DNA from: Rebecca billardiae RCC1528
Taxonomy: Eukaryota; Protista; Haptophyta
DNA: 64,000 bases
Direction: 5' to 3'
Assembly (NCBI GenBank): GCA_965240325.2
Contig: OZ251222.1
Coordinates: 1,054,001 to 1,118,000, forward strand
Positions within the stretch are counted from its first letter, which is position 1; each line of letters begins with the position of its first letter. The notes beneath the pieces are model-generated. The model saw only the letters and a program-made list of their open reading frames with translations. It had not been told where the DNA came from and did no database searches. Shown one piece after another: positions 22,406-60,035 of the stretch. The position numbers and the translations under genes were made by a program.

Positions 22406-22768
22406 TTTCCGACGCACCCCTCGCCTAGCGAGGGGTGCTCGACCGTTACGGAAGATTAGATGCACCTGGCCTCTTTGGGTGCGTCTTGTAACGTGACGTT
22501 CGGCGGCCGCCATCGTGACGGATCCTGACGGGAGTTCCCACTTCTTCCCATCCCTCTCTCCCCTGCTCAGGCTGGCTGGTACTCTCCGCCATCGCACTCG
22601 CTGGGCTGTGCCCGCCGAGTAACGATGGCGGCGCAGTCCGGAGGAGAGTACCAGACAGCTGCTCAGGCACGCCGCACGGCGCGGCTGAGTGGAAACACTT
22701 GCGCTCCACCCGCCTCAGCAGTGTGGCTCCACACCTCTCGCCCGCGCCTGCCAGGGCGGCCAGGGCTC

Positions 22769-23965
22769 ATGCGTGGAAGCAGAGCGCCATTATTCGCCGC
22801 GATTGTCGCGGCTTTAGGATGCGGCGTGCACGCGAGCGCACCGCGCGAGCCGTTCGGGCTCGAGCTCGACCCTGCGATGCTGCCGGGAGGACCTCGGCGG
22901 GAGCTCGCGTTTGCGACCTCCTTTGGCGCATCTGACCCAGGACCGCTGGGTGGAATGGGCGGGTTCCTGCTCTCGCCAGTGAAGCTCGAGAAGATGGCCG
23001 CCCGACGGCCACCGCCACTGATCTTCATCGAGACGCACGAGACGGCGGAGGCGGAGGTGTCCAACATCGTCCACCGGCTGGGCGACTGGCGGAATCTGTC
23101 GTTCATGATCCCGCGCAACTTCGTCTCGATGGGCTTCCCCGGGCCGTTCCCCGGGCCGTACATGCCCCTGGCACACAGGCAGTTCGACATTATCGCCAAC
23201 CACGCGACGCTCGACCTGCGACGAATGTCCACGTACCTGCGGCAGCGCAAGCCGCTCGTGTTCAGCGTGCTGCTCGACCCGGTGCGCCAGTTTGAGAACG
23301 CGTACAACAAGTACAAGCAGCACCGGCAGGTGCCGGTGGGCGACCACCTCGAGTGGATGCGCGCGCTCACGTACGTCACGACGACGGCGGCGGCGCTGTT
23401 CCGCAACCCGCAGGCCCACGACCTCGGCTGGTACAAGCACGTCGCGTACAGCACGTCAAAGGACCACGACGAAAACGCGATCACTGAGTGGATCGAGACC
23501 GTGCTCACGCCGCAGGTCGACCTGATCCTGATCGCCGAGCGGCTCGACGAGGGGCTGGTCGTGCTCAAAGAGGCGATGAACGGCACCGTCGCCATCGAGG
23601 AGCTCGTCACCGTGCCGCTGCGCGAGCACAAGCCGGGGCAGCGGCACGTCGGCCTCACGCACACGCAGGAGCAGCGCGTGCTGCGCATCAACCACGTCGA
23701 CCACGTGCTCTACCGCCACTTCGCGCGCAAGTTCGATCGGATCGCCGCGCACATGTCCGCCAACGCGCGCGAGAACCTGGACAAGCTGCGCACGCTCAAG
23801 CAGCAGTACGAGGGCAAGTGCAAGGGGCTGCCGCGCTGGGGCTCTGGCCGGGGGGCCGTCCGCCCCAAGGTGCGATACGTTGCCAAGGAGAAGCAGTGCC
23901 CCCTCGCGCTGCGCACGGATGCAAACGGGTACACGCGCCACCACGCAACGAGGCAGCAGGGCTGA
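22769..23965 (+). CDS. Galactose-3-O-sulfotransferase-like protein with altered PAPS-binding motifs
   Basis: Signal/anchor at the N-terminus; IFIETHETA..VSNIVHRLG....SF..P, FDIIANH, FSVLLDP...FE, FRNPQAHDLG, DLILIAERLDEGLVVLK, N.VD..LYRHF all match the Gal3ST fold. Confidence 0.8.
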   Translation: MRGSRAPLFAAIVAALGCGVHASAPREPFGLELDPAMLPGGPRRELAFATSFGASDPGPLGGMGGFLLSPVKLEKMAARRPPPLIFIETHETAEAEVSNIVHRLGDWRNLSFMIPRNFVSMGFPGPFPGPYMPLAHRQFDIIANHATLDLRRMSTYLRQRKPLVFSVLLDPVRQFENAYNKYKQHRQVPVGDHLEWMRALTYVTTTAAALFRNPQAHDLGWYKHVAYSTSKDHDENAITEWIETVLTPQVDLILIAERLDEGLVVLKEAMNGTVAIEELVTVPLREHKPGQRHVGLTHTQEQRVLRINHVDHVLYRHFARKFDRIAAHMSANARENLDKLRTLKQQYEGKCKGLPRWGSGRGAVRPKVRYVAKEKQCPLALRTDANGYTRHHATRQQG

Positions 23966-25623: not shown

Positions 25624-25868
25624 ACTCCATCCACAGCATTGTCAGCTTGATGAGCTGATCAAGAGCGTCCTTCGTTAGTCGTTCGCTTTGACGCTCGGTG
25701 CTTCCAGACGATCTCAGATCCAGATTGAAGATCACGCAAGGGTCGAAATCACACTGGCAGCGGCGCGCGCGCGGCAACAGCAAGCTCCAAAGCGGCCTGG
25801 CGGCGCAGCACTTGTGAGCAGCGGAGCACCGCCGCGGCTGGGACGCACGGCCTCGAGGCGGAGTCGGG

Positions 25869-27887
25869 ATGGCACCGCGCATCGAGCCCTCGCCGAACAG
25901 GCGGGCCAAGTGCCGCGTGTGCTACGCGCAGATCGACAAGGCCGTCCTCCGAGTCGGCACCGAGGCGATGTCCGAGTGGGGGCCGACGACCCAGTGGCAC
26001 CACATGAGCTGCCTCAACCTTTCCAAGCACGTCAAGTCCGCTGCCGAGCTCGCGGGCTTCGCGGAGCTCTCTGGAGCGCACCAGGCCGAGGTGCTCGGGC
26101 ACTTCAACGGCGGGGGTGCCGCGAGCGCTTCTGCGCCGCCGACGCCGGCGCGGCCCACGCCAAAGAAGGCCGCGCCGAAGGAGGCGCGTCCCGAACAGAT
26201 TGCCGAGAAGGCGCCGCTGGAGCGTGGGATCTGCGCCATCGAGTACGCCAAGGCGCAGAAGCCCTCGCCGTGCATGATCTGCAAGGGAAAGATCGCCAAC
26301 GGCGAGCCGCGCGTGGGCGACAGGCAGCCGTCGCCATACTACGAAGGTGTGCGCGCACCGCGAACATTGCGCGCGCGCGAGCGCGCGCGCATGCAGTCCG
26401 CGCGGCTCGCGCGTTGCACGCTCCCTCGCGCGCTGCTGTCGCGCCGCGGTCCGCGGTCGAGCCCGTGGCGCCCGCGCGCGGCGGATACCTCCGCGCAGGC
26501 CTGCAGACGCGCTGGCTCTGCCTCTCGTGCGCGCTGAGCGGGCGGCGCGTTCTCTCGCTCACGCAGCTCTGCGGCTGGGACCGCATGGGCTACGACGCGA
26601 ACCGCGAGATCCGCGAGGCGACGGGCGAGCTCCTCGTCGGCGAGAAGGAGGCGGAGCTCGAGCGGATGATGGCGCCGCTGGAGGGGCTGACGGACGAGAT
26701 CACCGCCAACCTCTCGGTCGACGCGCTCGTCGGCGCCCTCCGGCTGAACGGCATCGACGTGCGCGCGCTCACGATCGAGCGTGACACGGTGTGCATGGCG
26801 CACGTGCTCGCAGACGCGATGCTGAACGGCGTCGCGGCCGACTGCCCCGTGTGCGAGATGGCGGGGCTGCACTTCGCCGCCGGGCGGATCGCGTGCCTCG
26901 GCCACGTCGAGAACCTCTCGCGCTGCCCGTACCGCTGCGCGCCCGACAAGGTCGCGCGCTACCGCTGCAAGCTGCCGCAGGAGTTGCTCGACTCTGATTG
27001 GCTGGCCGCGTGGCGCGCGGACGCGGACGGCGCGCCCGCAAACGGCAAGGGCAAGAAGGGCGGCAAGCGCAGGGCGGCGGCGATGAGCCGGAGCTCAGTG
27101 GGCAGCCGCGCGCTCGCCGGCCTGGAGCTCGCGCAGCCCAAGCCCAGCGACACGCCCTCCGCCGCGCCCACACCGCGGAAGCCGCCGCCGACCCGCGAGG
27201 CGCCGCAGCCCTTCTCGCCCATCCTCGAGGTGCACCGCGGGTACCGGCAGACCGGCCTGTACGGCTCGGCGAAGGTGCTCGTCGACGACGACGGCGTGAC
27301 GGTGTACAACGCGCACCTCATGCAGGTGGACGTGGCGACCCGCGTCAATCGCTACTACATCGTGCAGGCCCTCGCCGTGGGGGGCACCTTTGAGGTGTTC
27401 TGCCATTGGGGCGCGACTGGGCGTGAGGAGGAGGAGGAGGTGGGCGGCGCGCGGTGGCGCGACAACTACCAGCGCTACCCGCAGCCGACGAAGCAGGCGG
27501 CGATCGACGCCTTCAAGGGCTGGTTCGCCAAGAAGACGAACTGGTCGTGGGACGACCGGCACAACTTCCGCCAGACGCCCAAGTGGTACAACTTCGTCGA
27601 GCTCTCCACGCACGACCCGCGCGCGAGCAAGCCCGGCGCCGGCTCGGCCGCGGACGGGGCGGGGCCGACCAAGCCGTGCGCGCTGGACGCGCCGGTCGCA
27701 GAGCTCGTGGAGCTGCTCTTCGACGCGGATACGATCCTCAACTCGATGTCGACGAACGGCATCCGCGTCGATGACAACTTCGGCATCCACTCGGTGACCG
27801 CCGAGCGCGTCGAGCGCGCGCACGGCATCCTGAGCCGGCTGGTGCAGCTCCTCAAGCAGCGGCCGCCGCCGCTCGAGCCCGCGGCCG

Positions 27888-27921
<34 letters not shown>

Positions 27922-29165
27922 CTGCCGGGGCGCGCGCGCGCGCAAGCCGACGAAGAAGCAGCTGGAGAAGGCGCAGGCGGACGCCGCGCGCGCCGAGGCC
28001 GAGCGCGTCGACGCGCACGAGCAGGCCGAGCGCGTGTGGCGCGCCAAAGTCGACGCGCTGAGCAACGACTTCCAGCAGACGATCCCGGCGGTCGACCCGG
28101 TGCGGCTGGACACAGACGCCAGGCTCGAGGAGAAGGCCAAGCTGCTCGACACGCTGAGCGACATCGCGCTGGCGCAGCAGCTGCTCAAGAAGGGCCAGGC
28201 GGAGGCGGACAGCGCAGCGGCGGCGGCCAGCGCCGAGCCCGCGCCGCATCCGCTGGACGTCAAGTATCAGTCGCTCAAGTGCGAGCTGCGCGCCCTGGCG
28301 GATCAGGACCCGGTGAGCGACGCGGTGCGCCGCGCGGTGCGCAACACGGCGAGCACGCTGCGCAAGTACGAGGGCCACCTCTCCGGCTTCCGCATGCGCA
28401 CGCGCGCGGTCGGCTCCTCCTCGCGCGACGACGGCGCATGGGCGCCCGAGGTCCTGGGTGTGTTCGCCCTCGAGCGCGAGGGCGAGCGCGAGCGGTACGA
28501 GCCCTACACGGAGCTGGGCAACTGCCGGCTGCTCTGGCACGGCACGGACGTGAGCTCCGCAGCGGCGATCGTCTCGTCGGGGCTGCGCATCATGCCCAGC
28601 TCGGGCGGGCGTGTGGGCAAGGGCATCTACCTCGCCGAAGGTGCGCGCACGCGCGCGCGCGGCATGCACACGATTGGGCGGCTAGACCGCGGCCCCCGTG
28701 CCTCTGACGGACACTGCGCGTGCGCGTCGCGTGCTCCGCGCACGCCTCGAATGGCGCGCGCACCGTGGCGCAGAGGTGAACAAGTCGGGGTGGTACGTGA
28801 CTCCGTCGGCCTCTGGCGAGGCCATTATGTTCCTCGCGGAGGCGGCGCTTGGCCACCCGGCGAGCGTGCAGTCCGACAACCCCAGCTTGAAGAAGGCGCC
28901 TCCCGGCCACGACTCGTGCGTGACGACGTCCTGCACGATGCCCGACCCGGCGCACGACGTGCAGCTCGATCTGGACGCCCGGCAGGTCACCTTCGCCACG
29001 GGCCCGATCATCGAGCCCGAGCCGCCCGCCGCGGCGCCGGGCGCGGGCAGCGGCGCCGGTGGCGCGAAGAAGCAGCCGCCACGAAGCCCGTTTGTGCAGA
29101 AGGAATACCTCGTCTATCGCGAGAGCCAGGTCCGCCTGCGCTACCTCGTGAAGCTCCGCATCTGA
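25869..29165 (+). CDS. PARP: Poly/mono(ADP-ribose) polymerase with 2 zf-PARP, PADR1-type zinc domain, WGR, regulatory and catalytic domains, 3 exons
   Basis: RAKCRVC..WHHMSC; IEYAK..CMIC..WLCLSC; CPVC..C..C; NRYYIVQ..HWG; HPLDVKYQSLKC; LLWHGT, GKGIY, KSGWY, EYLVY. Introns 26347-26498 and 28641-28773. Confidence 0.92.
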
Positions 29166-29618
29166 TTTCATGCAGATGAGGATGATGACCATGATGATGA
29201 TGATGATGACGTAGTAGTCGTCCGATATAAATGATGACGCGCCCGAGTATAGGCGGTCTATAAATAGTCTTAATTTAATTAGGACTGATCGTAGTAGCAG
29301 TCTGTGCATTATCGATTATGACTTGTGATGTCAGGCATCAGATGTCATCAGCATGTCGGAACACGCGCCCGCTTAACTAACGCGTCTATGGCTATCGTCA
29401 TCATCTTCCGGGCGTGCACGCCGCCGCAGTAGACTGTAGACACTACTATATTAGTAGGCGCACAGCGCGCTCGAGATCCTTTGCGGCCGCCTTGCCCGGC
29501 GCGCCGCCCATTCGACATCTCAATGGCAGCCCATGTCGCAGCGGCAGCGGCCGCTGCGGTGACCTCCGCGCATGCCGAGGGGGGGGCTGCTTCCGTGATT
29601 AAATGCCAGCCTGCTTGA

Positions 29619-31083
29619 TCAGACGTCGTAGTTGCGCAGCAGCCAGAAGCCCTGCACGCCGTCGTCCTCCAGCTCTTTCTGCACGGCGATAAAGTGCAGC
29701 CCGCGCGCTTCGCGGCACGCGCGAGTGAAGGCCGCCGCCTGCAGACGCGCGCGCGGCCCGGGACGCGCGTCAGCCCGAGCGTCAGCCAGGCGTGCGCACG
29801 CGCGGCGCGTGCGCGTGCGCGCGGCGCGGCGCGGAGCGCACCTCCTCGCGCTGTTTGAGATCCCACAGCTTTGCAAACATGTACTGCGTGTCAATGCCCA
29901 CCTCCAGGAGCAGATCTCCACCCTCCAGATTGACCGAGATCGACGCGAGCTCCGTCCCAGACATCCACGCAGCCAGCGGCTCGGCGCGGCCCGAGGTGAT
30001 GAGCAGGCCCGGGATCGGCGTGTCATCGGGCAAGTCGATGTCGTCGACGGAGAAGAGCGTGCCGAAGCCGATGTTCGACGCGTCGATGCTCCGCTTGGGC
30101 CCGCGCAGCTCGCTGATCTGCGCCGCGCGCGAAGCGCGCGCGGCCGCAGCGGCGAGCAGGAGGGCACAGCCGGGCGCGTCGCAGGGCAGAGGCAGGGGTG
30201 AGCGGCGTGCGGCGTGGGGCTGAAGGGGAGGGCGTCTCGACGCGCCGTGCGCCGCGCACGCTTCCGCCACACGCCCCGCGCCACCGCCGCCGCCTCCGCC
30301 ACCGCCGCAGGCGCCGCTGCACACCGGCAAGTTGACAAACACCCACTTGTCTCCGCGCAGCGCGTCCGGCATCTTGGTCGGCACGCGGTCCAGGGCGGGG
30401 CGGGCGCGCTCCTCCTCGGCGAGGGCCTCGTTGTACCCCGGCATCGTGGGGTACGTGTCGCCGTAGCGCTGCTCGAGCCAGTTGCGCAGCTCGTACGTGC
30501 GCCGCGTCGGCACAGTCAGCACTGGGAGCTCAGAGAGCGCGACACCGATCATCGACTGCATCTCGGAGCGGAAGAAGCGCACCTGGGTGGGGCGCACCTC
30601 CGCGCGGTCGATGAGCGCCTGCACGCGCTTGCGCAGCTCGCGCGAGTTGATCAGCGACGAGGGCAGCGGCTCCACGTGCCGCATCACGCCGTTCGAATCG
30701 CACACGAGCAGCTCCCACAGCTTCTTGCCCATGTCGTTGGTCACCGGCCGCGTGTATAGGTCGAGCTCCCAGATGGGCGACGGGGGCCCGCGACGCGCCG
30801 AGCGCGGCGCGGCCGACGGCGGTGCGCCCGCAGCCGGACCGGCCTGGGCGTCCGACGGCGGGGGTGGCGTAGACGCCATGCGCGCCACTGCTCGAGGCGC
30901 GGCGCGCGCGCGCGCGCACTGCGCGTCGACGCATGCCTGCGCCACCGGGAGCGCGTGTGGCTGCACGCGCGTGGCGATACCACGTCCGCCGACCGACGCC
31001 ACGCTGCCCGCAGCTGCCGCCACCGTCGCCGGCGCGATGCCGACCGCTGCAACCCACAGCGCTGTCGCGGCGTGGGCTCTCAT
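29619..31083 (-). CDS. TAB2: Tab2/ATAB2 plastid RNA-binding protein with bipartite leader, 3 exons
   Basis: WELDLYTRP....KKLWELLVCD, INS, VRFFRSEMQSMI, RRTYEL..WL, PDALRGDKW, RA.PLAAWMSG.E, GLHFIAVQ, GFWLL. Introns 30118-30324 and 29739-29841. Confidence 0.92.
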
Positions 31084-31347
31084 CGTGTCAGCGATGGGGT
31101 ACGCGTCGCGCGCAATTCCAGCACGCTTATTCTCGAAAACTTTCCATTTAATTGGGCCACGCACCTTGCACGCACGAGATCTTCTGTGCTGAGATCTCCA
31201 CCCGACCGGAAGGACGACGCCGCGACGCAGAAGCTCTCCGCTCAGCGAAGGCCCCGGCGCGGCAGCCATGTGAAGGTTGTATGACGTTATCTATCGCCGC
31301 CGCCATGTGTCCTTGGTCAGCGCAGGGTGACTGAGGAGCTTGCCCTC

Positions 31348-32132
31348 ATGGAGGGCGGCGAGCTCTCGGATGAGGAGGCTGTGCCGTCGGGCCAGAGGCG
31401 CGGCACGACGATCTCCGCGCCCTCGACCAAGGAGACCATCGACAAGCTGTGCAAGCGGCTCAGCGCCGAGGACCACGCGGAGGTGATCAAGCTGGTCGAG
31501 GAGCTGCAGAGAAGGCGGGCGGACATGGGCCGGCTGCGCTACCAGGCCGAGCAGGCCAAGGCGCAGCTGGCGCCGGTGGTGCAGGAGCGCGAGGCGGCGA
31601 AGCAGGTCGCCGAGTTCGAGCGCAACACGCGCATCGCGCTCGAGGAGGACCTCAAGGAGCAGCGCGTCTTCATCGCCGCGTGCGCCAAGGCAGTCTCGCG
31701 CACCTCTGTCGCGCTCAGCGACGCGATCCGCGTGCGGAGCGTGGCGCGCGTGGAGGAGGCAGTGAACGACCTGCGCCCGGTGCAGATGCGGATCGTGGTG
31801 AACGGCGCGACGCAGCACGCAGCCGAGCGCCAAGCCGTCTCCTTCCTCGAGAACAACTTCCCGCTCTTCAGCCACAACGTGCGCGCCGGCGCCGCGACTG
31901 CCGTCGGCGCGTCGCCTGAGGACGCGGACGCACGTGTGCGCACGGGCATCGACCTGGTCTCGCTCTTCAACGCGGTGGACGACGAGGCCTTCGAGGACGA
32001 GCAGCGGCAGCTGGTGCTCAGCCGCGTGCGACAAGCCGCGGGCGACGTCGTCGCGAGCGAAGTCACCGAGAGCGAGCGCGCCGGCGGCTCACTCGGCGCG
32101 GCCGCAGTGAACGCCCTGGCGGCGATTGCAGC

Positions 32133-32174
<42 letters not shown>

Positions 32175-33840
32175 GCAGGGAGGGTCGAAACGGGTGGGCT
32201 GCGCGAGCGTGGCGGGCGCGGCCGTCGCGCCATTCGACGACCACATCTCCGAGAGCGAGGCGAGCAGCGTCGCCGAGTGGGCCGACGAGCACGCGCCGAG
32301 GGCGCTGTATGGCGCGCGCCCCCCGAGGCCTGGCGCACGGCGCGTGTCTCTGCCACCGGCGGGCGTGGGCGCGGGCGGACGGCCCGGGCGGGTGGGCGGG
32401 CGGAAGGGCTCCACGGCAACCGACGCGAGCGAGCCCGCTCCCGCCAGGCGGTACAGCGCCGCGTCCACCTCCGCCGCCGCCGCCGCCCGCCTGCTCAGCA
32501 CCGTGAGCGAGAAGGTTGACGCATCGAGCAGCGGCCGCGCGGGGCGGCGCCGCCCGTCCGGTGGCACCGGCCAGCCTCCGCTCGAGCGCTCGTCCACGAT
32601 GGCGTGCGACCGGAGCGTCTCCGCGGAGGAGGCGACGAGCGCGTATGTGGGCGCCGGCGCCGCGCATCGCCTGGCTCGCCGCGTCTCGGGCAGCGGGAGC
32701 GGCGGAGGCTCGTTCAAAGGGCCGGGTGGCGCGGCGGGCGGCGCGCCGGCCTCGGGAGGGCGCGGCGCGGCCGACGGCGCGGGCAGCAGGCGTGGCAGCG
32801 CGCAGGTCGCACCCAAGCTGCGCCGGAGCGCGTCGGAGCGCGTGCCCTCCGGCAGCGACGCGAGCCTCGGCTCGGCGGGCGAGATGAAAACCGGCCCGGC
32901 GGCGGCGGCCGTCGCTGCTGCCCGCGCCGCAGTGGCGGAGCTCGCCGCAGAGGCCGAAGCGGAGTTGGCTAGCCGTCTTGCGTACGCCGGCGGCGCGCCG
33001 CCGCGCGCGGCAGCTGACGGCCCTGGCCGAGCCGTGGCGGGGTACGCGCAGGCCGACGCGCCGCGCGAGGTGCGCCGCTCGCCAAGCGTCACGTTCGCGT
33101 CCACGGACGGCCTGCCGCTCGGCGCCATCCCCACGGCGCTGCCGCCGAGGCTGCCGCGCGCACACAGCGGCCCGGCCGAAGCCCTCGGAGGCGGCGCTGC
33201 GGTTGGAGTGGATGGCGGCGGCGGCAGCCTGGACTCCGCGCTGTGGGTGGGCTCGGGCGCGGGGGCGGCGAATGAGGCCGCCCACGCCTCCAGCTCGGCG
33301 CTCGGCGCCGCAGCCGACACGCCGCAGCCTGCGCCGCGCTCAGGCGCCCAGGCGGCGGCGGCGGGCGGAGGGGCGGCGACGCTCAGCCCGGGACCCGGTA
33401 TCTCGGCCGTCGAGATCACGCCAGCGGAGGAGCCGAAGGGCGCGGGTGAGGCAGAGGCGGCGGCGGGCACGAGCGGCGCGAGCGGCCGTGCCGGCGCCGC
33501 CGCCGCGCCCCTGAACGTGCGCCGCGGCTCACGGCACGTCCTGCTGGGCCTCCCAGCAGACGGCGAGGGGGCGGCCTCGGCCGCGGCGCCGTCTCCGACC
33601 ATGCGGCTCGCGCCCCAGGACACGGTGGACCAGGCTGCGTTCAACTTCACGCTCGCGGCGGGCTCGGACACTGGCCGCGCCGCAAGCGGCGACGCCGCGA
33701 AGCTGCGCCCAAGCGACGGCCCACAGGTGCACGTGCTCGAACGCGCGCACGTGAAGCTGCCCGCGCCGCCCATCCACGCGTCGCCCAAGCTGCCCAGCAC
33801 ACCAAAGTCGCACGCGCAAGATTCGTTCCTGTTCTCGTGA
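31348..33840 (+). CDS. Hypothetical protein with N-terminal coiled coil and long Ala/Gly/Ser-rich tail
   Basis: Long uninterrupted ORF with heptad-like segment (LVEELQRRR...ALEEDLKEQ); no family recognised. Confidence 0.65.
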
Positions 33841-34225
33841 CGGCCCGCGATGGCGTGGGCCACTGGTTGGCGGCGAGGCTGTCGACCGCCGGGATCGTAG
33901 GTCGCCGCAACATGCGTGTGGCCGAGCACGGGGGTGCCCCGACCGCTGAGCGCACTACTCATCAGATTATCAGAGTCGAAAATCGTCGTATACGCAGTCA
34001 GCGGAAAATTATTGCATGGGCTTCCACCCCAGCATGCAAATAAAAAAAGGAGCAACGGATGTCGATCTGCTCGCACTCGGTTCGCTCCACACGTCAAAGG
34101 GTGGCCCCGGCCAAAGTTTGCATCTCGAGATCGCCATCTCCCAGTGCTGCACAGCCGTCGTCATCAAGTACCCACCCGCTTGCGCACCCCAAACCGGCTG
34201 GGCTGGCGGGTGGCACGTGAGCACG

Positions 34226-35913
34226 ATGCTCGCGCGCCGATTCAGCAGCGCGGATGGGTCGACCGTGGTCGACCCTCCGCCTCGGCTGTCTCCGTTGGAT
34301 ATGGGCGAGGCCATCCAGGCTCTCCGCAACTCCACCATGTTCTCGACGCTCTCGGAGGCCAACCTGCGGCGCGTGGCCGGCCGCATGCACCGGCTGGAGT
34401 TCAACAAGGGTGATGTGCTGATGCGCCAGGGGGAGGCCCAGGAGCACATGTACGTGGTCACCTCGGGCACGGTGAAGCGCGAGCGGTACGAGCGTGGCCG
34501 TGTGCACGACACCGAGACCCTCGGCGCCTCGCACTCGCTCAACACGATTGGCGCATTGCATCTGCTCAGATGCGAGCCCACCTACGCGACCGCGCGGTGC
34601 GAGTCGCCCATCGTCGCGTACCGGTTGAGCTCGACCGACCTGGACGAGCTGCTGTGCTCGCCATCGATCGCAAAGGAGGTCGTCTTCGCGCTCACGCGGG
34701 AGATCAAGCGCCAGTCGATCAAGCTGCGCACGCCGCTGCTCGAGCAGCACTCGCTCCAGCTGCCGATCGTCCCCACGTCGGTCGCCGCCGCGATCGAGTC
34801 GTTCTACCGCTCGGCGCTCAACTCGTGGCTCAACTACCGGCTCACCGGGCACTCCGCCGCGCTGTTCCCCAACATGCACGTGCAGCTGCCCACGCGCGTG
34901 CTCTACATCAACGGCTTCAAGATCATCCGGCAGACTCTGGACGAGCACGTGCAGCCGGACGATTACTCCCACCCCGACGCCGTGCGCTGGCTCAAGGTGG
35001 GGGGGGCGCGTGCGCGCGAGGGCGCGCGGGTGGGAGTCGATGGAGCCGTGGCGCGTGGGCCTGGCTGGGTTGGGCGCGCGCCGCCAAGCGTGTGCCCGCT
35101 CGAGTGCCCACGCGCGCGCGCTTGACGTGACGGCGCGCTGGGCCGCTGCTGCGCCGGCGCCGCGCGCGCCCTGATCTCCGCCCATCCCGCCGACGCGCTC
35201 GCGCGCAGGCGATCACGCCAGGCCTCGCGATGACGCCTGTCTCGAGCGTGCTCGAGGCGTGCAACGCCGGCCACTCCAACCCGGAGCCCCTCGCCCTCCG
35301 CTGGATGCGTGGGCTCGTGCCGCGCGCCGGCCGCGAGGTGATTTTCGGCATTGGCTTGAACCAGCTCTCCGAATATTGCGAGGAGCGCGTGCCGGTGCAG
35401 GACCCGATGCGCCGCTCCTTCTTCGGTGCGCACGGCATGGGCGTCGACGCCGCTCGCCTCGCGGCACGCCACGCCGCGCCCCCGGCGCGCGGCTCACGCG
35501 CCCCCGACACGCCCAACCCGGCTGCGCGCCCTGCTGCGCGCCCTTCCGGCCCTCCAGGCTCTCTGACTGCGGGCATCATCTGCGGCTACCTCAGCCACGT
35601 GCCGCACAACCTGTCGACGCTCAAGCTGCTGCACCCAGAGAAGACGTACATGCAGCACACGCACGACCTGATCAGGACCTCGTACCTGCGCGTGCCGCGC
35701 ACTGTGCCCAAGCCGGCGCGGTGGGCGACGGCGGCCATCCTGGCGTTTGCGGCGCCCGCGGGCCTCACCGTGCGGACGACGCAGATCGCGGGCAGCTTCT
35801 GCATCATCAACGGCGTGATTGCCGCCATGAGCCGGAGCAAGAACGGCAACGGCAACGGCAACGGCGCTTATGCCACCACCGCCCTCGGCACCACGGTCCC
35901 GCTGAGGCGATGA
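34226..35913 (+). CDS. Cyclic-nucleotide-binding domain fused to a divergent mitochondrial-carrier-like domain, 3 exons
   Basis: CNB: MFSTLS..L..VA..M....FNKGDVLMRQGE...MYVVTSGTV...IGALHLL..EPTYATARC. Carrier-like: MTPVSSV, RGLVPRAGREVIF, GSLTAGIICGYLSHVPHNLSTLK, GLTVR. Introns 34997-35208 and 35426-35557. Confidence 0.75.
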
Positions 35914-36977
35914 GCACCTCCACCAGTCAGCAGGCGCACTCGCACGCACCCGGCGCACACGAGTTCCCAGCCAGCACCCTGTCTAGCGGCTTGTCTTGCC
36001 CTGTGCCCCAGCGGCGGCCACCCGTCACCACACAGTCCGGCACTGCACACCCTGCACGCACCATCATGCATTCAATCCAGCACACTACCGCGCAGCTCGC
36101 ACTGTAACGACAGGGCGCCGCTCCTTCCGATGCCGCGCACCCGGTTTGAGTCCACGCCTCTGAGCCGCTGAGCCGCTGACCGCTCCCGCCGGCGGCATCA
36201 TCATCCGATCAATATCTCACTGCCGTACAGGTCTAGGCCTGCCCCGGAGCCCCAAGCCGGGTACTGGGGCTGCCACCATCCGTCCGACATGTAGTGTGAT
36301 GTGACGTCCGTCTGCTCGCCCTTCGGGGCGGCCATTCAGATATATATATATGTGTCCTCCTGCATGAAGAGCGACGCGACGCCATTGAGTATGGACGAAC
36401 ATCACCCACAGTCTGCGTGATGTGCATGCGAGGGCAGGTATTGCAGCATATATGCGAGCATGCAGCAAATGCCGATACACACCATGCCGAAATGGTGATG
36501 TATAAATATATACTTGCGCGTGGTGGGGATTTCGCAACGAGCACAAGCAAAGAACGCAGAGGAGATGGCGGGACCTCGGGCTTTGCAGATGCGCAGGCCG
36601 AAGCAGGGGCTGCCGAGAGATGAGCAGCTCGGCCCGAAAGGTCGTGTAACCGATGATCGAGCGAGCTCTGCTTAGGTGGGCTGCTTGATATGAACTTTGG
36701 TAAGTTGCCACGCCGACTTAAGATGACCTTGTATATGATCTCGAGCGCCGGATAGTGGAGAGGAGCGGGTACTTACAGAGGAGCCAGTGTGGTTGGCCGA
36801 TATGAAAGGACCAGCGCCCGCCATGATGATGATAAAGGATAGCTCCGTGGCCGATGAGCTCCGGAAATCGACTGCAACTACCTGCAGGACCTAGAAGACG
36901 ATGGCGGCCCTTGTCCACCAGCTGCGCGTTGCCTTTCCAGCCTCCCGACACACTCGGTTATAACTCCGTTATAACGC

Positions 36978-37110
<133 letters not shown>

Positions 37111-37530
37111 TGGCTGCTTCACTCTTCAGCCGGCCGCGCCGTGACGCCGCGACGCGCCGTGACTGCCGTCGGCGTCTGTTACTCAGTGTCTGTCCGCGGT
37201 GTATTAAGCTTGTGGTGATAACGACCGATGAAGGCTCGTGGTCACTTACTGATCTGCAGCCGCACCGGCTGAGCCGGACAGTGAACGTCTGGGCAAAACG
37301 GGCGCGCCACAGGCCGCACGTTACGAAGGCACGCGGCTCGCCTTAGACTCTAGTTAGACGCGCGACAGGCGCCGTACCAAAAGAAAGGCAGTCGCCCGAG
37401 CCATCGACTCCATCGCTTGCCGAGCCAGCGGGGGAGCGCACCGAGCGCGTTGCTAAGCCGAAGTTCATCAGCGCAGCTGCTGTCATGGCGCTAGGCCAGG
37501 CTGCCAGATGAGTATACGTGACTCATAAAT

Positions 37531-39204: not shown

Positions 39205-40887
39205 TCACGGGCTGGGATCCAGGTCGATCGCGTGTGCAGCGCAACGACCGGAGTCGTCGTCTGACGGAGCCTCCGAGAGGCAAAATGTTGATGTCGTCGT
39301 TGCCTCGAACGGCATCATCGCCACATCAGGAGAGCCCGGTGGCGACTGCGATGCCTCCGGCGGCGACATGGTCTGGGGCGAGTGCACTGGGCCCTGCCAA
39401 TGCCAGTCGTCTGCGGCGGGTAGCATCTCGGTCGTCTCGCCAGCATCGGGCGTCTCATCTGCCGCATCGCCGCGAGGGCTGGCCGACTCCACAGCGCTTC
39501 GGTTGGGGAGAGGCGTGCCGACCTCCGCAGCGTGCCCACGCTCGTCCGCGGCCAAGGAGGCACCGCGAGAAGCGGGGCTGAGCGGCGCGTCGTCCTCCTC
39601 GCTCGTGAGCCGGTCGTCCGCGGTGATGTCCAGGTCAACCGCGCCATCCTCCTCCGTGAGGTCCAGCTCCGCCAGCCGGCCCTGAACCGATGCGCGAGGA
39701 GCGTGCGGCGGTTGCTCTGGGTGCGTGCGCGCGCGCGGAGCGCTCGAGCCAGCTGCAGCGGACCCGGTGGCACGGGCCGGCGGCGGCATCGCGCCCGCGG
39801 TGCGTGGCGGCGCGGCGGTGCGGGTCGCCGCGTCGAGGCCCAGCCGCACCGCATCGGGCCACAGCAGCCGCTGCTCGCAGCTCGGGCACTTCCCTGCTGC
39901 CGGGATGAGCTCGAGAGTTGCGCGCTCTCCGAGGAAGCGGGCTGCAAGGCAGTGCGGGTGGGCGGCGAGCTGCGCGCACGAGCAGCCGACAAAGTGCGCG
40001 CCGAGGGCGTCGCCGCACAGAGTGCACGGGAGCGCGCGCGCTGTCGGGGCGCGAGTTTCGGCCGTGCGCGCCGCCACGCGCGCGCGGCCCTCCGCCTCGC
40101 CCGTGGCGGGGCGACGCAGCTCGAAGCCGGTGCGGTCCTGGACGGCACCGTCGACGTCGCTGCCACTGTCCGCGCGGTCGAGCATGTCGATGATGGCGTC
40201 CTCTTCATCGCTGCCCTCGTCTTGCCCCTCTCCCTCCACCTCGCCCTCGTCTTCGTCGTCCTCTTCGCCCTCCTCCTCCTCCTCCTCCTCCTCCTCGTCG
40301 TCCATCTCGCTCTCCGCCGCTGCGCCGCGCGCGCGGGCCGCAGAGTGTTGCCGCAGGGCATCGCATGCGCTCGCGTCCCCAGAGGTGATGCGCGCGCGCA
40401 CGTGCTCCGGCACGGCGGGCAAGTGCATCTCGCCGCGGAGCAACTGCTCGTGCCGCTGCACCACGAAGTGAGACGGCTGGTGTGCGCAGCCGAACAGGTG
40501 CACGCCGAGCGGCTGCAACGAGAATGGCTTGGTGTTCAGGATGAGCGCGAGCACCACGAGGCGGGAATCCAGCCGATTCTTCCCGCGGCTCTTGACGTGC
40601 TGGGAGACGGCGTCACGCAGCAGGCGGGACTTGTCCGGCTTCGTCCACGCCCACTCGAACTGCAGCGCGATCGTCTTCGTGGTGAAGCCGTGCACGACGA
40701 GGACGAGTTCCCACGGCCTGAAGCGCGCCGTGCGCAGCGCGCCGCCCTTGATCTCGCCGTTGTGCTGGCGGATCCGACGGAGCGGGCTGACGGTGAAGCC
40801 GACGTAGGTGCGCCCGGCGCCCTTCGGGTGCAGTGACTGTAGCAGGTAGCACGAATACGTCGGCATCCGCGATGGCTCGCGTGCCAT
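39205..40887 (-). CDS. SLX1: Structure-specific endonuclease SLX1 (GIY-YIG plus RING/PHD-like zinc finger)
   Basis: YSCYLLQS, TYVGFTVSPLRRIRQHNGEIKGGA.RT..RPW..V..VHGF...ALQFEWAW; C-terminal CTLC..C..HPHCLA..F...LIP..GKCPSC...WPD. Confidence 0.93.
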   Translation of the reverse strand: MAREPSRMPTYSCYLLQSLHPKGAGRTYVGFTVSPLRRIRQHNGEIKGGALRTARFRPWELVLVVHGFTTKTIALQFEWAWTKPDKSRLLRDAVSQHVKSRGKNRLDSRLVVLALILNTKPFSLQPLGVHLFGCAHQPSHFVVQRHEQLLRGEMHLPAVPEHVRARITSGDASACDALRQHSAARARGAAAESEMDDEEEEEEEEEGEEDDEDEGEVEGEGQDEGSDEEDAIIDMLDRADSGSDVDGAVQDRTGFELRRPATGEAEGRARVAARTAETRAPTARALPCTLCGDALGAHFVGCSCAQLAAHPHCLAARFLGERATLELIPAAGKCPSCEQRLLWPDAVRLGLDAATRTAAPPRTAGAMPPPARATGSAAAGSSAPRARTHPEQPPHAPRASVQGRLAELDLTEEDGAVDLDITADDRLTSEEDDAPLSPASRGASLAADERGHAAEVGTPLPNRSAVESASPRGDAADETPDAGETTEMLPAADDWHWQGPVHSPQTMSPPEASQSPPGSPDVAMMPFEATTTSTFCLSEAPSDDDSGRCAAHAIDLDPSP

Positions 40888-40930
40888 GCTCACAGGGCAA
40901 CGGCCTACTACCAGGCGAAAGCCGCCATCG

Positions 40931-40940
40931 TTTTGGCGCG
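40931..40940 (+). promoter_or_regulatory. E2F-like site TTTTGGCGCG in the SLX1/TRM112 divergent spacer
   Basis: Matches TTTSSCGC, about 45 bp upstream of the SLX1 ATG. Single short motif. Confidence 0.35.
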
Positions 40941-41040
40941 ATGAGTTCCAGGGCCCTCGCCACTGAGTAGCAGCGGTGCGCGCCGCCGCCGGGTCCTGTC
41001 GTCGTGCCCAACGACGGCCGCGCGGAGCACGGCTCGGAGC

Positions 41041-41501
41041 ATGAAGCTTCTCACGCACAACATGCTCACCTCGCCGGGGAACGCAAAGGGCTTCCCGCTC
41101 AAGATCGAGGCAGAGAGCGTCGAGGAGGTGGAGACGGATTTCAACGCCGAGTTTGTCGCGCGCATGGTGGGCAAGCTCGAGTGGAAGGCCTTGCTAGCGG
41201 CCGTGAAGGAGGTTGGGATTACTGCGCAGCTTCCGCCGGAGGTGCCTGAGAAGTACGAGGAGGACGAGGAGTTCTTGAAAGTGCTGCACCACGTCCTACT
41301 CGAGGTGCGTGCCGGGGACCTTGGATCCGCACTTCGCGTCTGCCCGAACGCGCGCGCATGACTGCGACAACGCCGTGCGCTCATCCGGGTGCGAATGCGA
41401 TGCGTGTTCCTGCGCAGGTGGAAGTGGTGGAGGGCCACCTGGTATGTCCGGAGACTGGTCGGAAATTTCCCGTCAAGGAGGGCATACCCTCCATGATCTA
41501 G
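41041..41501 (+). CDS. TRM112: Methyltransferase activator Trm112, 2 exons
   Basis: MKLLTHNML, GFPLKI, DFNAEF, FLKVLHHVLLE | VEVVEGHLVCPETGRKFPVKEGIPSM. Intron 41305-41417. Confidence 0.95.
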
Positions 41502-49280: not shown

Positions 49281-50837
49281 ATGACGGTCGATCATGAATC
49301 GCTGCTGCTCGTGGGCTCGGGACGTGATTCTGAGCCGCGCAGGGCGCAGCGCAGGAGACTGCGCGTGCCACAGGTCGTGCTCGTGGCTTTGCTTGGGGCA
49401 GCTGTCCTCTGCCTGACGATTGGGGCGCGGTACAGAAGCCGTGGCGCTGCATCGCGGCTGCGCGACGATCAACCACCGCCAGAGCTGTACGACTGTGAGC
49501 TTCCAGTGCCACCAACGCGCGAGGATCCGCCCGCGTGCACGGAGACGCTGTTCACGCATCTCTTCCGTGCCAAGTTTGAGGAGATGCGGGCTTCGATCGT
49601 GAACATATCCGCCGCCTTCCCGCCACGCGACAACTCTGCGCACACCGCCTGGCGCGCCCGCCACGGACAGCTACGTGGTGTGAACGTCGGTGGGTGGCTC
49701 CTGCTCGAGCGGTGGCTGGTGGGGAAGGACCCGACCGTCGAGACGCGGTGCTGCGGCGCCGTGCAGTCGCCCTTCGACGGCACCACCTGGGAGACCGCGC
49801 CGGACGAGCTCAGCCTCACGCGCTGGCTGCGCGCCAACGGTGAGCTCTCGCGCATCAGCGCCTTCCGCGATACGTACATCAGCCGCGTCGACTTCGCGCT
49901 GATGCGCTGCCTCGGGCTGAACGCGGTGCGCATCCCGTTCGGCTACTGGCTCGCGACGCCGCCGGGCGTCGACGACGTCGACGGCTTCTTCCCCGGCCGC
50001 GGCCTCGAGTATCTCGACCGCGCGCTCGGCTGGGCGTCAGACTTTGGCCTCAAGGTCGTGCTCGACCTCCACGGCGCCCCGGGCGGGCAGAGCGGCGCGA
50101 TGACGTGCGGGCAGGAGGACCGCAACTGGGCGCCGGAGCGCTTCGGCGTGGACGCGACGGTCAGCGTGCTCGGGCGCATTGCGGCTCGCTACGCGGGGAA
50201 CCCCGCCGTGATCGGCATCGAGCTCCTGAACGAGCCCACACTTCCGCGCGAGCTCGCGCTCAGCGTGTACGGGCGCGCGATCGCGGCGGTGCGCGGCGCT
50301 GGGATGGCCGCCGAGGATGTGGCCATCGTGATCAACCTGTACGGCTTCGGCGAGCTATCCGTGGAGGGCTCCGTGTGGCAGGGCCTGCTCTCCGAGGGCG
50401 GGCTGCCGCCTGCCGAGAATCTGATCATCGATCTTCACCTGTACTACAACACGCTGCCACGCGTGTTCGCCCTCGTGCCTCTGTGCTACGTGACGAGCGA
50501 GCTCGTGGACGCGCAGTCGCGGCTGCTGTCGCTCCTCGGGCTGCCGACGATGGTGGGCGAGTGGTCGCTGCGCCTGCCATGGCAGGGAGAGCTCGCGCGC
50601 CAGTTCGAGGCGATGACGGCTCCTCAGCAGGACGCGTTTCTGGCTGCCTTCGCGCGAAGGCAAGTGGAGGGCATGGCGGCGGCCAACGCGAGCAGCGTGG
50701 GCGGCTTCTACTGGACGTGGACTGCGCCCGAGACCGAGGCGCAGTGGAGCCTGCTCCGCGTGCTGCAGAACTCCTGGCTCGTCCCAGGCGCTTGGACGCG
50801 TGCCCGTGAAGCAGGGGTCGTCTTGCCCCGACGGTGA
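49281..50837 (+). CDS. Glycoside hydrolase family 5, exo-beta-1,3-glucanase-like, N-terminal membrane anchor
   Basis: RGVNVGGWLLLERW, NAVRIPFGYW, VVLDLHGAPGGQ, IELLNEP (acid/base), DLHLYY, VGEWS (nucleophile), FYWTW. Confidence 0.92.
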   Translation: MTVDHESLLLVGSGRDSEPRRAQRRRLRVPQVVLVALLGAAVLCLTIGARYRSRGAASRLRDDQPPPELYDCELPVPPTREDPPACTETLFTHLFRAKFEEMRASIVNISAAFPPRDNSAHTAWRARHGQLRGVNVGGWLLLERWLVGKDPTVETRCCGAVQSPFDGTTWETAPDELSLTRWLRANGELSRISAFRDTYISRVDFALMRCLGLNAVRIPFGYWLATPPGVDDVDGFFPGRGLEYLDRALGWASDFGLKVVLDLHGAPGGQSGAMTCGQEDRNWAPERFGVDATVSVLGRIAARYAGNPAVIGIELLNEPTLPRELALSVYGRAIAAVRGAGMAAEDVAIVINLYGFGELSVEGSVWQGLLSEGGLPPAENLIIDLHLYYNTLPRVFALVPLCYVTSELVDAQSRLLSLLGLPTMVGEWSLRLPWQGELARQFEAMTAPQQDAFLAAFARRQVEGMAAANASSVGGFYWTWTAPETEAQWSLLRVLQNSWLVPGAWTRAREAGVVLPRR

Positions 50838-59684: not shown

Positions 59685-60035
59685 GGCGCAGCGTCTACGC
59701 CCACTTGCGGACGCCGGCAAGTGATTGAGAGCAGTGTGGGCCCCACAGTCGCCCCTTTTCGGATTCGCCTGTGATGGCCGACGAGCGAATCCTGGCCGTG
59801 AATCCGGAGTCCGGCGCGGCCGCCCGGGCGCGGCTGCTTCAAACGAGGATCGATCGCCGCGACCGGTGCAGCGGTGGATCTTCGTCATCGGCTCACGATG
59901 ACTCATCATTGTCTGTGTCAGTGACAGTGTATAACTACATACGTGTACAAGTAGCTGGTCGCCGATGCCTAGATCAGACTGTGTGACAGACAGTCTTCGG
60001 GCACACGAACGGGTCGTCGAGAGCGGAGGTGCGAC

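What the first reader, a model, noticed from the sequence alone, without database searches (positions are those of the whole stretch)
34226..35913. Cyclic-nucleotide-binding domain fused to a mitochondrial-carrier-like fold: candidate cNMP-regulated organellar transporter
Seen: a MLARRFSS leader, a full CNB domain, then six helices in SLC25-like order (IVPTSVAAAIES; LFPNMHVQLPTRVLY; AITPGLAMTPVSSV; WMRGLVPRAGREVIF; GSLTAGIICGYLSHVPHNLSTLK; AGLTVRTTQIAGSF). Known: SLC25 carriers have Px[DE]xx[KR] and [YWF][KR]G motifs, and their characterised regulatory domains are EF-hands. Here the charged salt-bridge residues are mostly lost and the CNB phosphate cassette is atypical (IGALHLL..EPTYAT versus FGE.AL...PR.AT). 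Inference: a nucleotide-gated carrier-derived channel or insertase, possibly sensing a ligand other than cAMP.
Basis: partly seen in the sequence, partly recalled or inferred. Interest (0 to 1): 0.7.

Follow-up and report, generated by a model that had tools for sequence, protein, structure and literature searches.

The report
Ligand-sensor domain fused to mitochondrial-carrier fold
This three-exon algal gene encodes a cyclic-nucleotide-binding-type sensor domain joined to a very divergent mitochondrial-carrier (SLC25) fold; the uncharacterised family occurs in many protist groups, and if it is a regulated carrier its regulatory module would be a kind not described for SLC25 carriers.

Summary
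On the + strand, a three-exon gene (34226-34996, 35209-35425, 35558-35913; 448 aa) encodes an N-terminal cNMP_binding domain (Pfam PF00027, E 3.5e-12) followed by about 270 residues with no Pfam hit above threshold.

I used an 85%-identical homologue (P0002), which spans both splice junctions, as a stand-in for the joined protein.
- **Fold:** the model is confident (AlphaFold2 pLDDT 91.7, pTM 0.81).
- **Carrier match:** the C-terminal half alone matches only SLC25 carriers: Z 16.6-10.9 against Tetrahymena complex-IV carriers, UCP1 and the ADP/ATP carrier. The next unrelated chain scores 5.5.
- **Sequence kinship:** this is weak. There is no PF00153 hit, and 25 of 81 relatives hit PF18405 "SLC25_like" below threshold.

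Two departures hold across the whole family.
- The carrier salt-bridge motifs are gone.
- The phosphate-binding cassette lacks the canonical Glu and Arg in all ~78 members aligned there and carries a near-invariant His instead. Canonical cAMP/cGMP binding is therefore unlikely.

The family has at least 537 proteins, from oomycetes, brown algae, diatoms, haptophytes, cryptophytes, Euglena, red algae and colponemids. Choanoflagellate members lack the sensor domain. The Euglena orthologue is listed in a published mitochondrial proteome.

Best reading: a ligand-regulated, non-canonical SLC25-fold transporter whose sensor faces the cytosol or intermembrane space. This is a new variant of a known kind.

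The parts
34226..34996 (+). Exon 1 (257 codons). It holds the start codon, the CNB-fold sensor, the conserved linker (..RTPLLEQ..), carrier helices H1 and H2, and the start of H3.
   Evidence: Translation. P0002 aa 1-220 aligns to 34337-34996 at 85% identity. GT follows at 34997.
34394..34654 (+). Pfam cNMP_binding match (aa 57-143).
   Evidence: PF00027, E 3.5e-12, 46.6 bits. PDB sequence hits are to PKA regulatory subunits and CRP-family regulators. Foldseek on the full model gives CRP/PKA-R domains at probability 1.0.
34547..34591 (+). Non-canonical phosphate-binding cassette, I-G-A-L-H-L-L-R-C-E-P-T-Y-A-T (aa 108-122). The canonical Glu is Ala, the canonical Arg is Thr, and His112 is near-invariant in the family.
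   Evidence: Sequence. Family column counts show no Glu and no Arg at these positions among ~78 aligned members, and His in 74 of 78. It aligns to the T. brucei cAMP-independent PKAR cassette.
34766..34846 (+). Carrier helix H1 (aa 181-207), with invariant E191 and R195.
   Evidence: Helix 144-170 of the P0002 model, mapped at +37. Invariant columns.
34874..34948 (+). Carrier helix H2 (aa 217-241), with invariant Q220, R224, K232 and R235. No matrix helix lies between H1 and H2.
   Evidence: Model helices. Conservation.
34997..35208 (+). Intron 1 (212 nt, GT..AG). It lies in the first turns of H3 and shifts the reading frame.
   Evidence: Sequence. The P0002 alignment jumps from 34996 to about 35206.
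35209..35425 (+). Exon 2. It holds the rest of H3 (P-x-S-S in place of Px[DE]xx[KR]), a short h34 helix, H4 with RWxRG..P...R-E (invariant R299 and E300), and the start of H5.
   Evidence: Translation. Model helices. Conservation.
35426..35557 (+). Intron 2 (132 nt, GT..AG, in frame, phase 1). If it were retained it would add 44 Ala/Pro/Arg-rich residues inside H5.
   Evidence: Sequence. There is a 44-residue gap against P0002.
35558..35916 (+). Exon 3 plus the stop codon. It holds H5 (G-Y-L-S-H-V-P-H-N-L-S-T-L-K), h56, a linker helix, H6 (invariant R402 and Q405), and a low-complexity tail (NGNGNGNG) with low model confidence.
   Evidence: Translation. Model helices, with pLDDT below 50 for the last ~17 residues. 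Conservation.

Best explanation
This is a nuclear gene of a plastid-bearing, high-GC alga, probably a pavlovophyte haptophyte. It encodes a 448-aa two-domain organellar membrane protein.

**Shown**
- The N-terminal ~170 residues form a CNB-fold ligand-sensor domain.
- The C-terminal ~270 residues form a six-helix barrel of the SLC25 mitochondrial-carrier fold.
- The fusion is one transcript and is conserved across many protist lineages.

**Inferred**
- The termini of SLC25 proteins face the cytosol/intermembrane space, so the sensor sits on that face.
- The sensor is joined to H1 through its C-helix and a highly conserved RTPLLEQ linker. Ligand-driven movement of the C-helix could therefore open or close the carrier's cytoplasmic side. 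This is the arrangement by which N-terminal EF-hand domains regulate the Ca2+-dependent carriers APC and AGC.
- The sensor most likely does not bind cAMP or cGMP in the canonical way. The cassette lacks the Glu and Arg and has conserved His/Arg residues instead (window R85, R87, H94, H112), which points to another, perhaps anionic, small ligand.
- The carrier half keeps a strongly conserved polar interior. One invariant arginine sits on each even helix (R224, R299, R402), and H4 carries an R-E pair 7-8 residues after its RG motif. That is the register of SLC25 substrate contact point II.
- The carrier half lacks both salt-bridge gate networks.

I read it as a solute transporter with non-canonical gating, most likely in mitochondria.
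For: **Gene model:**

**CNB domain:** (PF00027, E 3.5e-12; PDB sequence hits; Foldseek hits to CRP/PKA-R).

**Carrier fold**
- Model pLDDT is 91.7 with pTM 0.81 for the full protein, and 89.6 with 0.83 for the carrier half alone.
- The nine best Foldseek hits are all SLC25.
- VIA-align against 48,161 chains gives Z 16.3, 15.7, 10.9 and 10.8 for carriers and 6.5 for the next chain.
- In the second look, the 11 best entries are all SLC25 (Z 16.6-10.9), then 5.5.
- The top ESM Atlas structural hit is a 'Mitochondrial carrier protein' cluster, TM 0.66/0.76. The Atlas feature search also names carrier clusters, at score 0.92.
- PF18405 'Mitochondrial SLC25 homolog' is hit below threshold by 25 of 81 members, best E 1.5e-6.

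**One transcript and a conserved fusion:** (at least 537 proteins, most carrying PF00027).

**Non-canonical cassette:**. In PKA the cassette Arg neutralises the cyclic phosphate, and polar replacements accompany loss of cAMP binding in trypanosomatid PKAR (PMC10959531).

**Conservation:** the carrier half is more conserved than the sensor, 0.635 against 0.463 mean top-residue frequency, and it has invariant charged and polar residues in its helices.

**Mitochondrial location:** the Euglena orthologue EG_transcript_7927 (= P0153) is among the 'Verified Transcripts' of the purified-mitochondria proteome, with MT/CP 1.90 and no TargetP signal (PMC7403612).

**Import route:** the family has no conserved presequence, as is typical of carriers imported by internal signals.
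Against: - No transport, ligand binding or localisation was tested for this protein.
- PF00153 gives no hit even at E<=10.
- A family HMM finds no solved carrier by sequence.
- hhalign finds no similarity between the three putative repeats.
- The Px[DE]xx[KR] and [FY][DE]xx[KR] networks that define alternating access are absent. The only SLC25-fold proteins I know that lack them (MTCH2, SLC25A46) are outer-membrane proteins, not solute carriers (own knowledge).
- Repeat 1 has no matrix helix.
- The contact-point reading rests on motif register, not on a residue-level superposition. The tools return no coordinates.
- The Euglena enrichment is modest (1.9-fold over the chloroplast fraction), and that proteome also lists obvious non-mitochondrial proteins such as actin and myosin.
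- No RNA run of this organism was listed, so the splice sites rest on homology.
Confidence: 0.55

Rival explanations
1. It is an outer-membrane SLC25 derivative like MTCH2 or SLC25A46. On this reading the carrier fold has lost its gates and acts as an insertase, scramblase or lipid-handling scaffold, and the CNB domain sits in the cytosol as a regulator.
For: Both salt-bridge networks are lost across the family and repeat 1 lacks its matrix helix. There is no presequence. A large soluble N-terminal domain is easiest to accommodate on the cytosolic face (inference). Detection in a whole-mitochondria proteome does not separate the inner from the outer membrane.
Against: All six helices are modelled and match complete carriers over 228-235 residues. 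Nothing seen here points to an open barrel, though without coordinates this was not examined. One invariant arginine on each even helix and an R-E pair on H4 look like a solute site. No MTCH2 or SLC25A46 structure was among the hits, so the comparison could not be made.
Confidence: 0.2
2. It is a canonical second-messenger-gated carrier: the CNB domain binds cAMP or cGMP and switches transport. This is the reading in the finding's title.
For: PF00027 is matched above threshold. The fold matches cAMP-binding CRP and PKA-R domains.
Against: The cassette Glu (ribose 2'-OH contact) and Arg (phosphate contact) are absent in every aligned member, and the cassette instead reads G-[SAM]-L-H...P-[SAT]-[YF]-A-T. 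The best PDB sequence matches are the cAMP-independent trypanosomatid PKARs, which have the same Arg-to-Thr change and needed T318R plus E311A and V319A to respond to cyclic nucleotides.
Confidence: 0.1
3. The CNB fold is a ligand-free structural or protein-interaction module, like the CNB-homology domains of KCNH channels, and the carrier half works constitutively.
For: The canonical ligand contacts are lost. Choanoflagellate homologues lack the domain altogether (P0099, P0101, P0098), so the carrier half can stand alone.
Against: The replaced cassette is itself strongly conserved (His 74/78, Thr 63/78, Ala 61/78). So are R85 (69/74), R/K87 (69/75) and H94 (68/75) on strands beta4 and beta5, which looks like selection on a pocket rather than decay.
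Confidence: 0.12
4. It is an artefact: two neighbouring genes, or a wrong splice model, or a carrier fold that the prediction invented.
For: No RNA data from this organism were available. The reading frame changes between 34996 and 35209.
Against: P0002 (85% identical) crosses both junctions exactly. Hundreds of homologues, many from transcriptomes and marked complete, have both halves. The model has high pLDDT without templates and gives consistent hits from three independent structure searches.
Confidence: 0.03

Closest known systems
Ca2+-regulated mitochondrial carriers APC/SCaMC (SLC25A23-25) and AGC (SLC25A12/13)
   Same: The architecture is the same: an N-terminal soluble sensor followed by an SLC25-fold six-helix domain, with the sensor expected on the cytosol/intermembrane-space side. 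AGC1 clusters (Mito_carr plus EF-hand) appear among the Atlas structural hits to the carrier half.
   Different: The sensor is a CNB fold, not EF-hands; Pfam finds no EF-hand. The carrier half does not match PF00153 and lacks both salt-bridge networks.
Canonical SLC25 carriers (UCP1 8hbv, ADP/ATP carrier 2c3e/6gci, Tetrahymena complex-IV carrier subunits 8b6h_DV)
   Same: The fold is the same: Z 16.6-10.9, 210-235 residues aligned, rmsd 3.6-4.7 Å, covering all three repeats. The P-kinks in H3 and H5, a G-xxx-G in H5, an RWxRG..P...R-E H4 and an arginine on each even helix are retained.
   Different: Identity is only 8-17%, and there is no HMM-level sequence match. Px[DE]xx[KR] has become x-x-S-x-x-R, P-x-S-x-x-L and P-x-N-x-x-T. 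There is no [FY][DE]xx[KR]. Repeat 1 lacks the matrix helix.
Pfam PF18405 SLC25_like ('Mitochondrial SLC25 homolog')
   Same: It is the only Pfam family that recurs for the C-terminal half: 25 of 81 members, best E 1.5e-6, always profile positions ~162-275 of 285.
   Different: Every score is below the curated cut-off (best seen 25.3 bits against 34.5), and only the last ~40% of the profile is matched. I could not establish what PF18405 was built from.
Trypanosomatid cAMP-independent PKA regulatory subunit (PDB 6flo, 6hyi)
   Same: These are the best PDB sequence matches to the sensor (E 4.7e-10). The cassette Arg is replaced by Thr in the same P-T-x-A-T context, which shows that CNB folds can be retuned to non-cyclic ligands (PMC10959531).
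   Different: PKAR keeps the G-E Glu and has a Glu where this family has His. It is a soluble kinase regulator with two CNB domains, not a membrane fusion.
MTCH2 / SLC25A46 (outer-membrane SLC25 derivatives)
   Same: They are SLC25-fold proteins that have lost the carrier signature motifs (own knowledge, not tested here).
   Different: They have no CNB domain. No sequence or structure comparison was possible with the tools.

Membership tests
CNB domain superfamily (Pfam PF00027 cNMP_binding) | Profile match above the curated threshold | tested here: met
   46.6 bits against 27.5, E 3.5e-12, aa 57-143. Most family members carry PF00027.
CNB domain superfamily (Pfam PF00027 cNMP_binding) | Eight-stranded beta-roll flanked by helices, with a C-helix | tested here: met
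   The model has strands 18-98 followed by helices 99-106 and 109-129. Foldseek hits CRP/GlxR/PKA-R at probability 1.0, with TM by target up to 0.79.
Cyclic-nucleotide-binding CNB domains (functional cAMP/cGMP receptors) | Phosphate-binding cassette with Gly-Glu (ribose 2'-OH contact) and Arg (phosphate contact) | tested here: not met
   The window has G-A...P-T. Across the family the Glu position is S/A/M and the Arg position is S/A/T/C/V; neither Glu nor Arg is among the residues tallied at those positions in 77-78 aligned members. The role of the Arg is given in PMC10959531.
SLC25 mitochondrial carrier family (Pfam PF00153 Mito_carr) | Profile match to PF00153 / SOLCAR repeat | tested here: not met
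   No PF00153 hit at E<=1 or E<=10 for the window's exons, five homologues and 81 domain sequences. A family HMM finds no solved carrier at E<=10.
SLC25 mitochondrial carrier family (Pfam PF00153 Mito_carr) | Six-helix barrel built of three two-helix repeats (fold) | tested here: met
   VIA-align Z 16.6-10.9 against 11 SLC25 entries, with 210-235 residues aligned across all three repeats, and 5.5 for the next chain. The top nine Foldseek hits are SLC25. Atlas TM 0.66/0.76.
SLC25 mitochondrial carrier family (Pfam PF00153 Mito_carr) | Detectable sequence similarity between the three repeats | tested here: not met
   hhalign of the three sub-alignments gives probabilities below 1%. Neff is low (2.4-2.9), so this test is weak.
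SLC25 mitochondrial carrier family (Pfam PF00153 Mito_carr) | Matrix salt-bridge motif Px[DE]xx[KR] on H1, H3 and H5 | tested here: not met
   Family consensus in the P-kink register is x-E-S-f-Y-R on H1, P-x-S-S-x-L on H3 and P-H-n-l-S-t on H5. The acidic position is therefore S/S/N and the basic position R/L/T.
SLC25 mitochondrial carrier family (Pfam PF00153 Mito_carr) | Cytoplasmic network [FY][DE]xx[KR] on H2, H4 and H6 | tested here: not met
   The nearest strings are F-K-x-x-R (H2), Y-x-E-E-R (H4) and F-x-I-l-N (H6). None fits the motif.
SLC25 mitochondrial carrier family (Pfam PF00153 Mito_carr) | Organellar (mitochondrial) membrane location | tested here: inconclusive
   The Euglena orthologue P0153 is in the verified mitoproteome, with MT/CP 1.90 (PMC7403612). 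That is one organism with modest enrichment, the sub-compartment is unknown, and nothing is known for this alga.
Pfam PF18405 SLC25_like | Profile match above the curated threshold (34.5 bits) | tested here: not met
   The best scores seen are 25.3 bits (P0013) and 15.1 bits for P0002. 25 of 81 members match below threshold over profile positions 162-275 of 285.
EF-hand-regulated carriers (APC, AGC) | N-terminal EF-hand Ca2+-binding domain | tested here: not met
   Pfam finds only PF00027 in the N-terminal half.
MTCH2 / SLC25A46-type outer-membrane SLC25 derivatives | Outer-membrane location, with a barrel open to the bilayer | not testable with these tools
   No coordinates are returned, and no MTCH2 or SLC25A46 structure or sequence was at hand.

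The most novel reading that the evidence does not exclude
The family is a new class of ligand-gated SLC25-fold transporter in protist mitochondria. A retuned CNB domain, with a His/Arg pocket in place of the cyclic-phosphate cassette, senses a non-cyclic-nucleotide metabolite. It directly gates a carrier that has replaced its salt-bridge gates with polar Ser/Asn contacts, so the protein works more like a gated pore or uniporter than like a strict alternating-access exchanger.
Probability: 0.3. Interest if true: 0.85.

Novelty: new variant of a known kind. Interest (0 to 1): 0.62.

Why it matters
The only regulatory domains known to me on mitochondrial carriers are the EF-hand modules of APC and AGC (own knowledge). 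A second, unrelated sensor module on the same fold would show that metabolite or second-messenger control of organellar transport evolved more than once. This one is conserved from oomycetes and brown algae to Euglena, cryptophytes and red algae. It would also give a natural example of an SLC25 barrel working without its salt-bridge gates.

The family occurs in plant-pathogenic oomycetes (Phytophthora, Aphanomyces, Pythium). No animal or land-plant hit appeared among the named hits; the only fungal-labelled one is a Batrachochytrium salamandrivorans entry of unclear origin. That makes it a candidate lineage-specific target.

The retuned cassette adds another case, besides trypanosomatid PKA, of a CNB fold that has apparently left cyclic nucleotides behind.

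Tried and rejected
- **RNA evidence:** no run was listed for 34100-36100.
- **Sequence links to canonical carriers:** all failed. PF00153 gave nothing at E<=10, the family HMM hit only chance matches among PDB sequences (HMG-CoA reductase, E 0.065), and hhalign found nothing between the three repeats.
- **Bridging through weak word-search hits:** P0093-P0104 gave no PF00153 or PF18405 match above threshold.
- **Giant-virus relatives:** none in viral contigs.
- **Literature:** four searches for a CNB plus SLC25 fusion, and one for PF18405, found nothing relevant. A Phytophthora zoospore membrane-proteome paper mentions both terms, but in unrelated contexts.
- **MLARRFSS as a conserved mitochondrial presequence:** rejected.
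- **Full-model Foldseek search:** it was swamped by CNB hits, so the carrier half was folded and searched alone.
- **Not done:** the 1.84-billion-protein search was not used, because of the operators' cost note and because no claim here rests on an absence of relatives. The exons were searched by reference and P0002 stood in for the joined protein.
Full report
**1. What is in the sequence**

The window is high-GC (about 0.56-0.78 in 2-kb windows) nuclear DNA of a eukaryote with short GT..AG introns. The finding's coordinates hold up.

- The ATG at 34226 opens a frame that runs to 34996 and ends ...RWLK, followed by GT.
- Exon 2 runs 35209-35425. Exon 3 runs 35558-35913 and is followed by TGA.
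- Intron 1 is 212 nt and changes the frame. Intron 2 is 132 nt, in frame, and interrupts a helix.
- The spliced product is 448 aa.

A tblastn of P0002 supports this model. P0002 is a 411-aa homologue from a 1,411-nt JGI contig. Its aa 1-220 align to 34337-34996 at 85% identity. Its aa 220-411 align to 35206-35910 with a single 44-residue gap equal to intron 2.

No RNA run of the organism itself was listed. The exons were searched by reference, and P0002 stood in for the whole protein.

**2. The sensor half**

- Pfam places cNMP_binding (PF00027) at aa 57-143, E 3.5e-12.
- PDB sequence hits are PKA regulatory subunits, PKG and CRP-family regulators.
- The AlphaFold2 model of P0002, built with 82 aligned homologues, has pLDDT 91.7 and pTM 0.81. 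It shows the beta-roll and the B and C helices. Foldseek matches CRP/GlxR/PKA-R domains at probability 1.0.

The phosphate-binding cassette is not canonical, and this holds across the family. The consensus is [VIF]-G-[SAM]-L-H-[LVI]-L-x-x-[DE]-P-[SAT]-[YF]-A-T. His is present in 74 of 78 members. Neither the Glu nor the Arg appears in the tallies at its usual position.

In PKA the cassette Arg neutralises the cyclic phosphate. The cAMP-independent PKARs of trypanosomatids have polar residues there. TbPKAR needed T318R, together with E311A and V319A, to gain high-potency activation by cyclic nucleotides (PMC10959531). Those PKARs are the best PDB sequence matches to this domain, and they share its P-T-x-A-T context.

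This family goes further by also losing the G-E Glu. Other conserved residues in the domain are R85, R/K87 and H94 on strands beta4 and beta5 (window numbering). I infer a pocket kept under selection for a ligand other than cAMP or cGMP. The ligand is unknown.

**3. The membrane half**

By sequence it is nearly orphan.
- PF00153 gives no hit even at E<=10.
- A family HMM finds no solved carrier.
- There is no detectable similarity between the repeats.
- The only recurring Pfam signal is PF18405 'Mitochondrial SLC25 homolog'. It is below threshold in 25 of 81 members, with best E 1.5e-6, and always covers profile positions ~162-275.

By structure it is clear. The domain modelled alone has pLDDT 89.6 and pTM 0.83.
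- The nine best Foldseek PDB hits are all SLC25 proteins.
- The Foldseek-independent VIA-align search of 48,161 chains gives Z 16.3 for a Tetrahymena complex-IV carrier subunit (234 aligned). It gives 15.7 for human UCP1 (228 aligned, rmsd 4.1, chain residues 11-298), 10.9 for a second Tetrahymena carrier subunit and 10.8 for the bovine ADP/ATP carrier. The next chain scores 6.5.
- In the second look, the 11 best entries are all SLC25 (Z 16.6-10.9), then 5.5.
- The best ESM Atlas structural match is a 'Mitochondrial carrier protein' cluster, TM 0.66/0.76. The Atlas feature search also names carrier clusters.

**4. How it departs from canonical carriers (family consensus)**

- In the P-kink register, the Px[DE]xx[KR] positions read S..R on H1, S..L on H3 and N..T on H5. 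The ionic matrix gate is therefore replaced by small polar residues.
- No helix has [FY][DE]xx[KR].
- Repeat 1 has only a 9-residue loop where the matrix helix should be.
- What is kept: the prolines of H3 and H5, G-xxx-G in H5, an RWxRG..P...R-E helix 4, and one invariant arginine on each even helix (window R224, R299, R402).
- Other invariant residues are E191, R195, Q220, K232, R235, E273, N281, N308, H343, H346 and Q405.
- The carrier half is more conserved than the sensor, 0.635 against 0.463.

The R-E pair sits 7-8 residues after the G of RG. From my own knowledge of SLC25 carriers, that is the register of substrate contact point II, where amino-acid carriers have R-[DE]. This is an inference from register, not from a superposition.

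**5. Distribution and location**

The first word search found 104 relatives, and a profile search found at least 537. Named sources include:
- oomycetes (Phytophthora, Aphanomyces, Pythium, Albugo, Hyaloperonospora);
- brown algae, Tribonema, a diatom, a raphidophyte and labyrinthulids;
- Pavlovales sp. CCMP2436 (70% identity, the closest named hit, which is why I guess the window is from a pavlovophyte);
- cryptophytes, Euglena gracilis, Rhodelphis, red algae and a colponemid.

UniProt and NCBI label them only 'cyclic nucleotide-binding domain-containing protein' or 'hypothetical'. Choanoflagellate members (Monosiga P0099, P0101, P0098) have the carrier half without the sensor.

None of 58 full-length homologues has a presequence-like N-terminus, so MLARRFSS is not a family feature.

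The Euglena orthologue P0153 is EG_transcript_7927. It appears in Supplementary File 1 and in the 'Verified Transcripts' sheet of the E. gracilis purified-mitochondria proteome. There it has MT/CP 1.90, no TargetP signal and function 'Unknown' (PMC7403612). This is modest but independent support for a mitochondrial location.

**6. Mechanism**

The termini of SLC25 proteins face the cytosol/intermembrane space. The sensor must therefore sit on that face. It is tied to H1 by its C-helix and the linker R-T-P-L-L-E-Q, in which T, P, L and Q are 86-95% conserved. The pTM of 0.81 for the two-domain model suggests a fixed packing.

The most economical reading is an APC/AGC-like design with a different sensor. 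Ligand binding would move the C-helix and control access to a polar, arginine-lined cavity. Because the ionic gates are missing, the transport cycle cannot be the textbook one. An MTCH2-like, non-carrier role in the outer membrane remains a serious rival.

**7. Novelty**

I found no paper describing a CNB-SLC25 fusion. The proteins are in public databases but are uncharacterised. I rate this a new variant of a known kind, with interest 0.62.

Noticed in passing
window 31327-33840 (+), mirrored by an 852-aa ORF on the minus strand at 31539-34097: An 837-aa Ala/Gly/Arg-rich ORF lies directly upstream and contains a (GA)n stretch. Only its first ~250 residues look like ordinary protein, and Pfam gives nothing significant. 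The long antisense ORF is probably a by-product of 78% GC.
   Followed up: partly
window ~36950-37120: A long (TA)n microsatellite, read as IYIYIY in the ORF at 36854-37144, lies in the lower-GC (0.56) intergenic stretch downstream of the gene.
   Followed up: no
window 29782-31269 (-): A Tab2/Atab2 RNA-binding protein homologue (PF06485 E 1.6e-31, PF20429 E 1.6e-23). To my knowledge Tab2/Atab2 acts in chloroplasts, so the organism probably has a plastid.
   Followed up: partly
window 25688-29179 (+); 39205-41058 (-); 55548-59909 (-); 7835-10054 (+); 886-2520 (+); 22625-23965 (+); 49281-50837 (+): Ordinary eukaryotic neighbours by Pfam: PARP (WGR, regulatory and catalytic domains), SLX1 (GIY-YIG plus SLX1_C), an NPC1/Patched-like sterol-sensing protein, an OST-alpha-type solute transporter, a PLP-dependent decarboxylase, a galactose-3-O-sulfotransferase and a GH5 cellulase.
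   Followed up: partly
P0096 (349 aa, ENA metagenome): One family hit carries an Orn/Arg decarboxylase N-terminal domain (PF02784, E 3.3e-10) next to a short match to this family. It is either a chimeric gene call or another fusion.
   Followed up: no
P0072 (NCBI: Batrachochytrium salamandrivorans BASA81_002242): A full-length CNB-carrier member is labelled as coming from a chytrid fungus, the only fungal label among the named hits. It could be a contaminant or mislabelled assembly, or a real fungal member.
   Followed up: no
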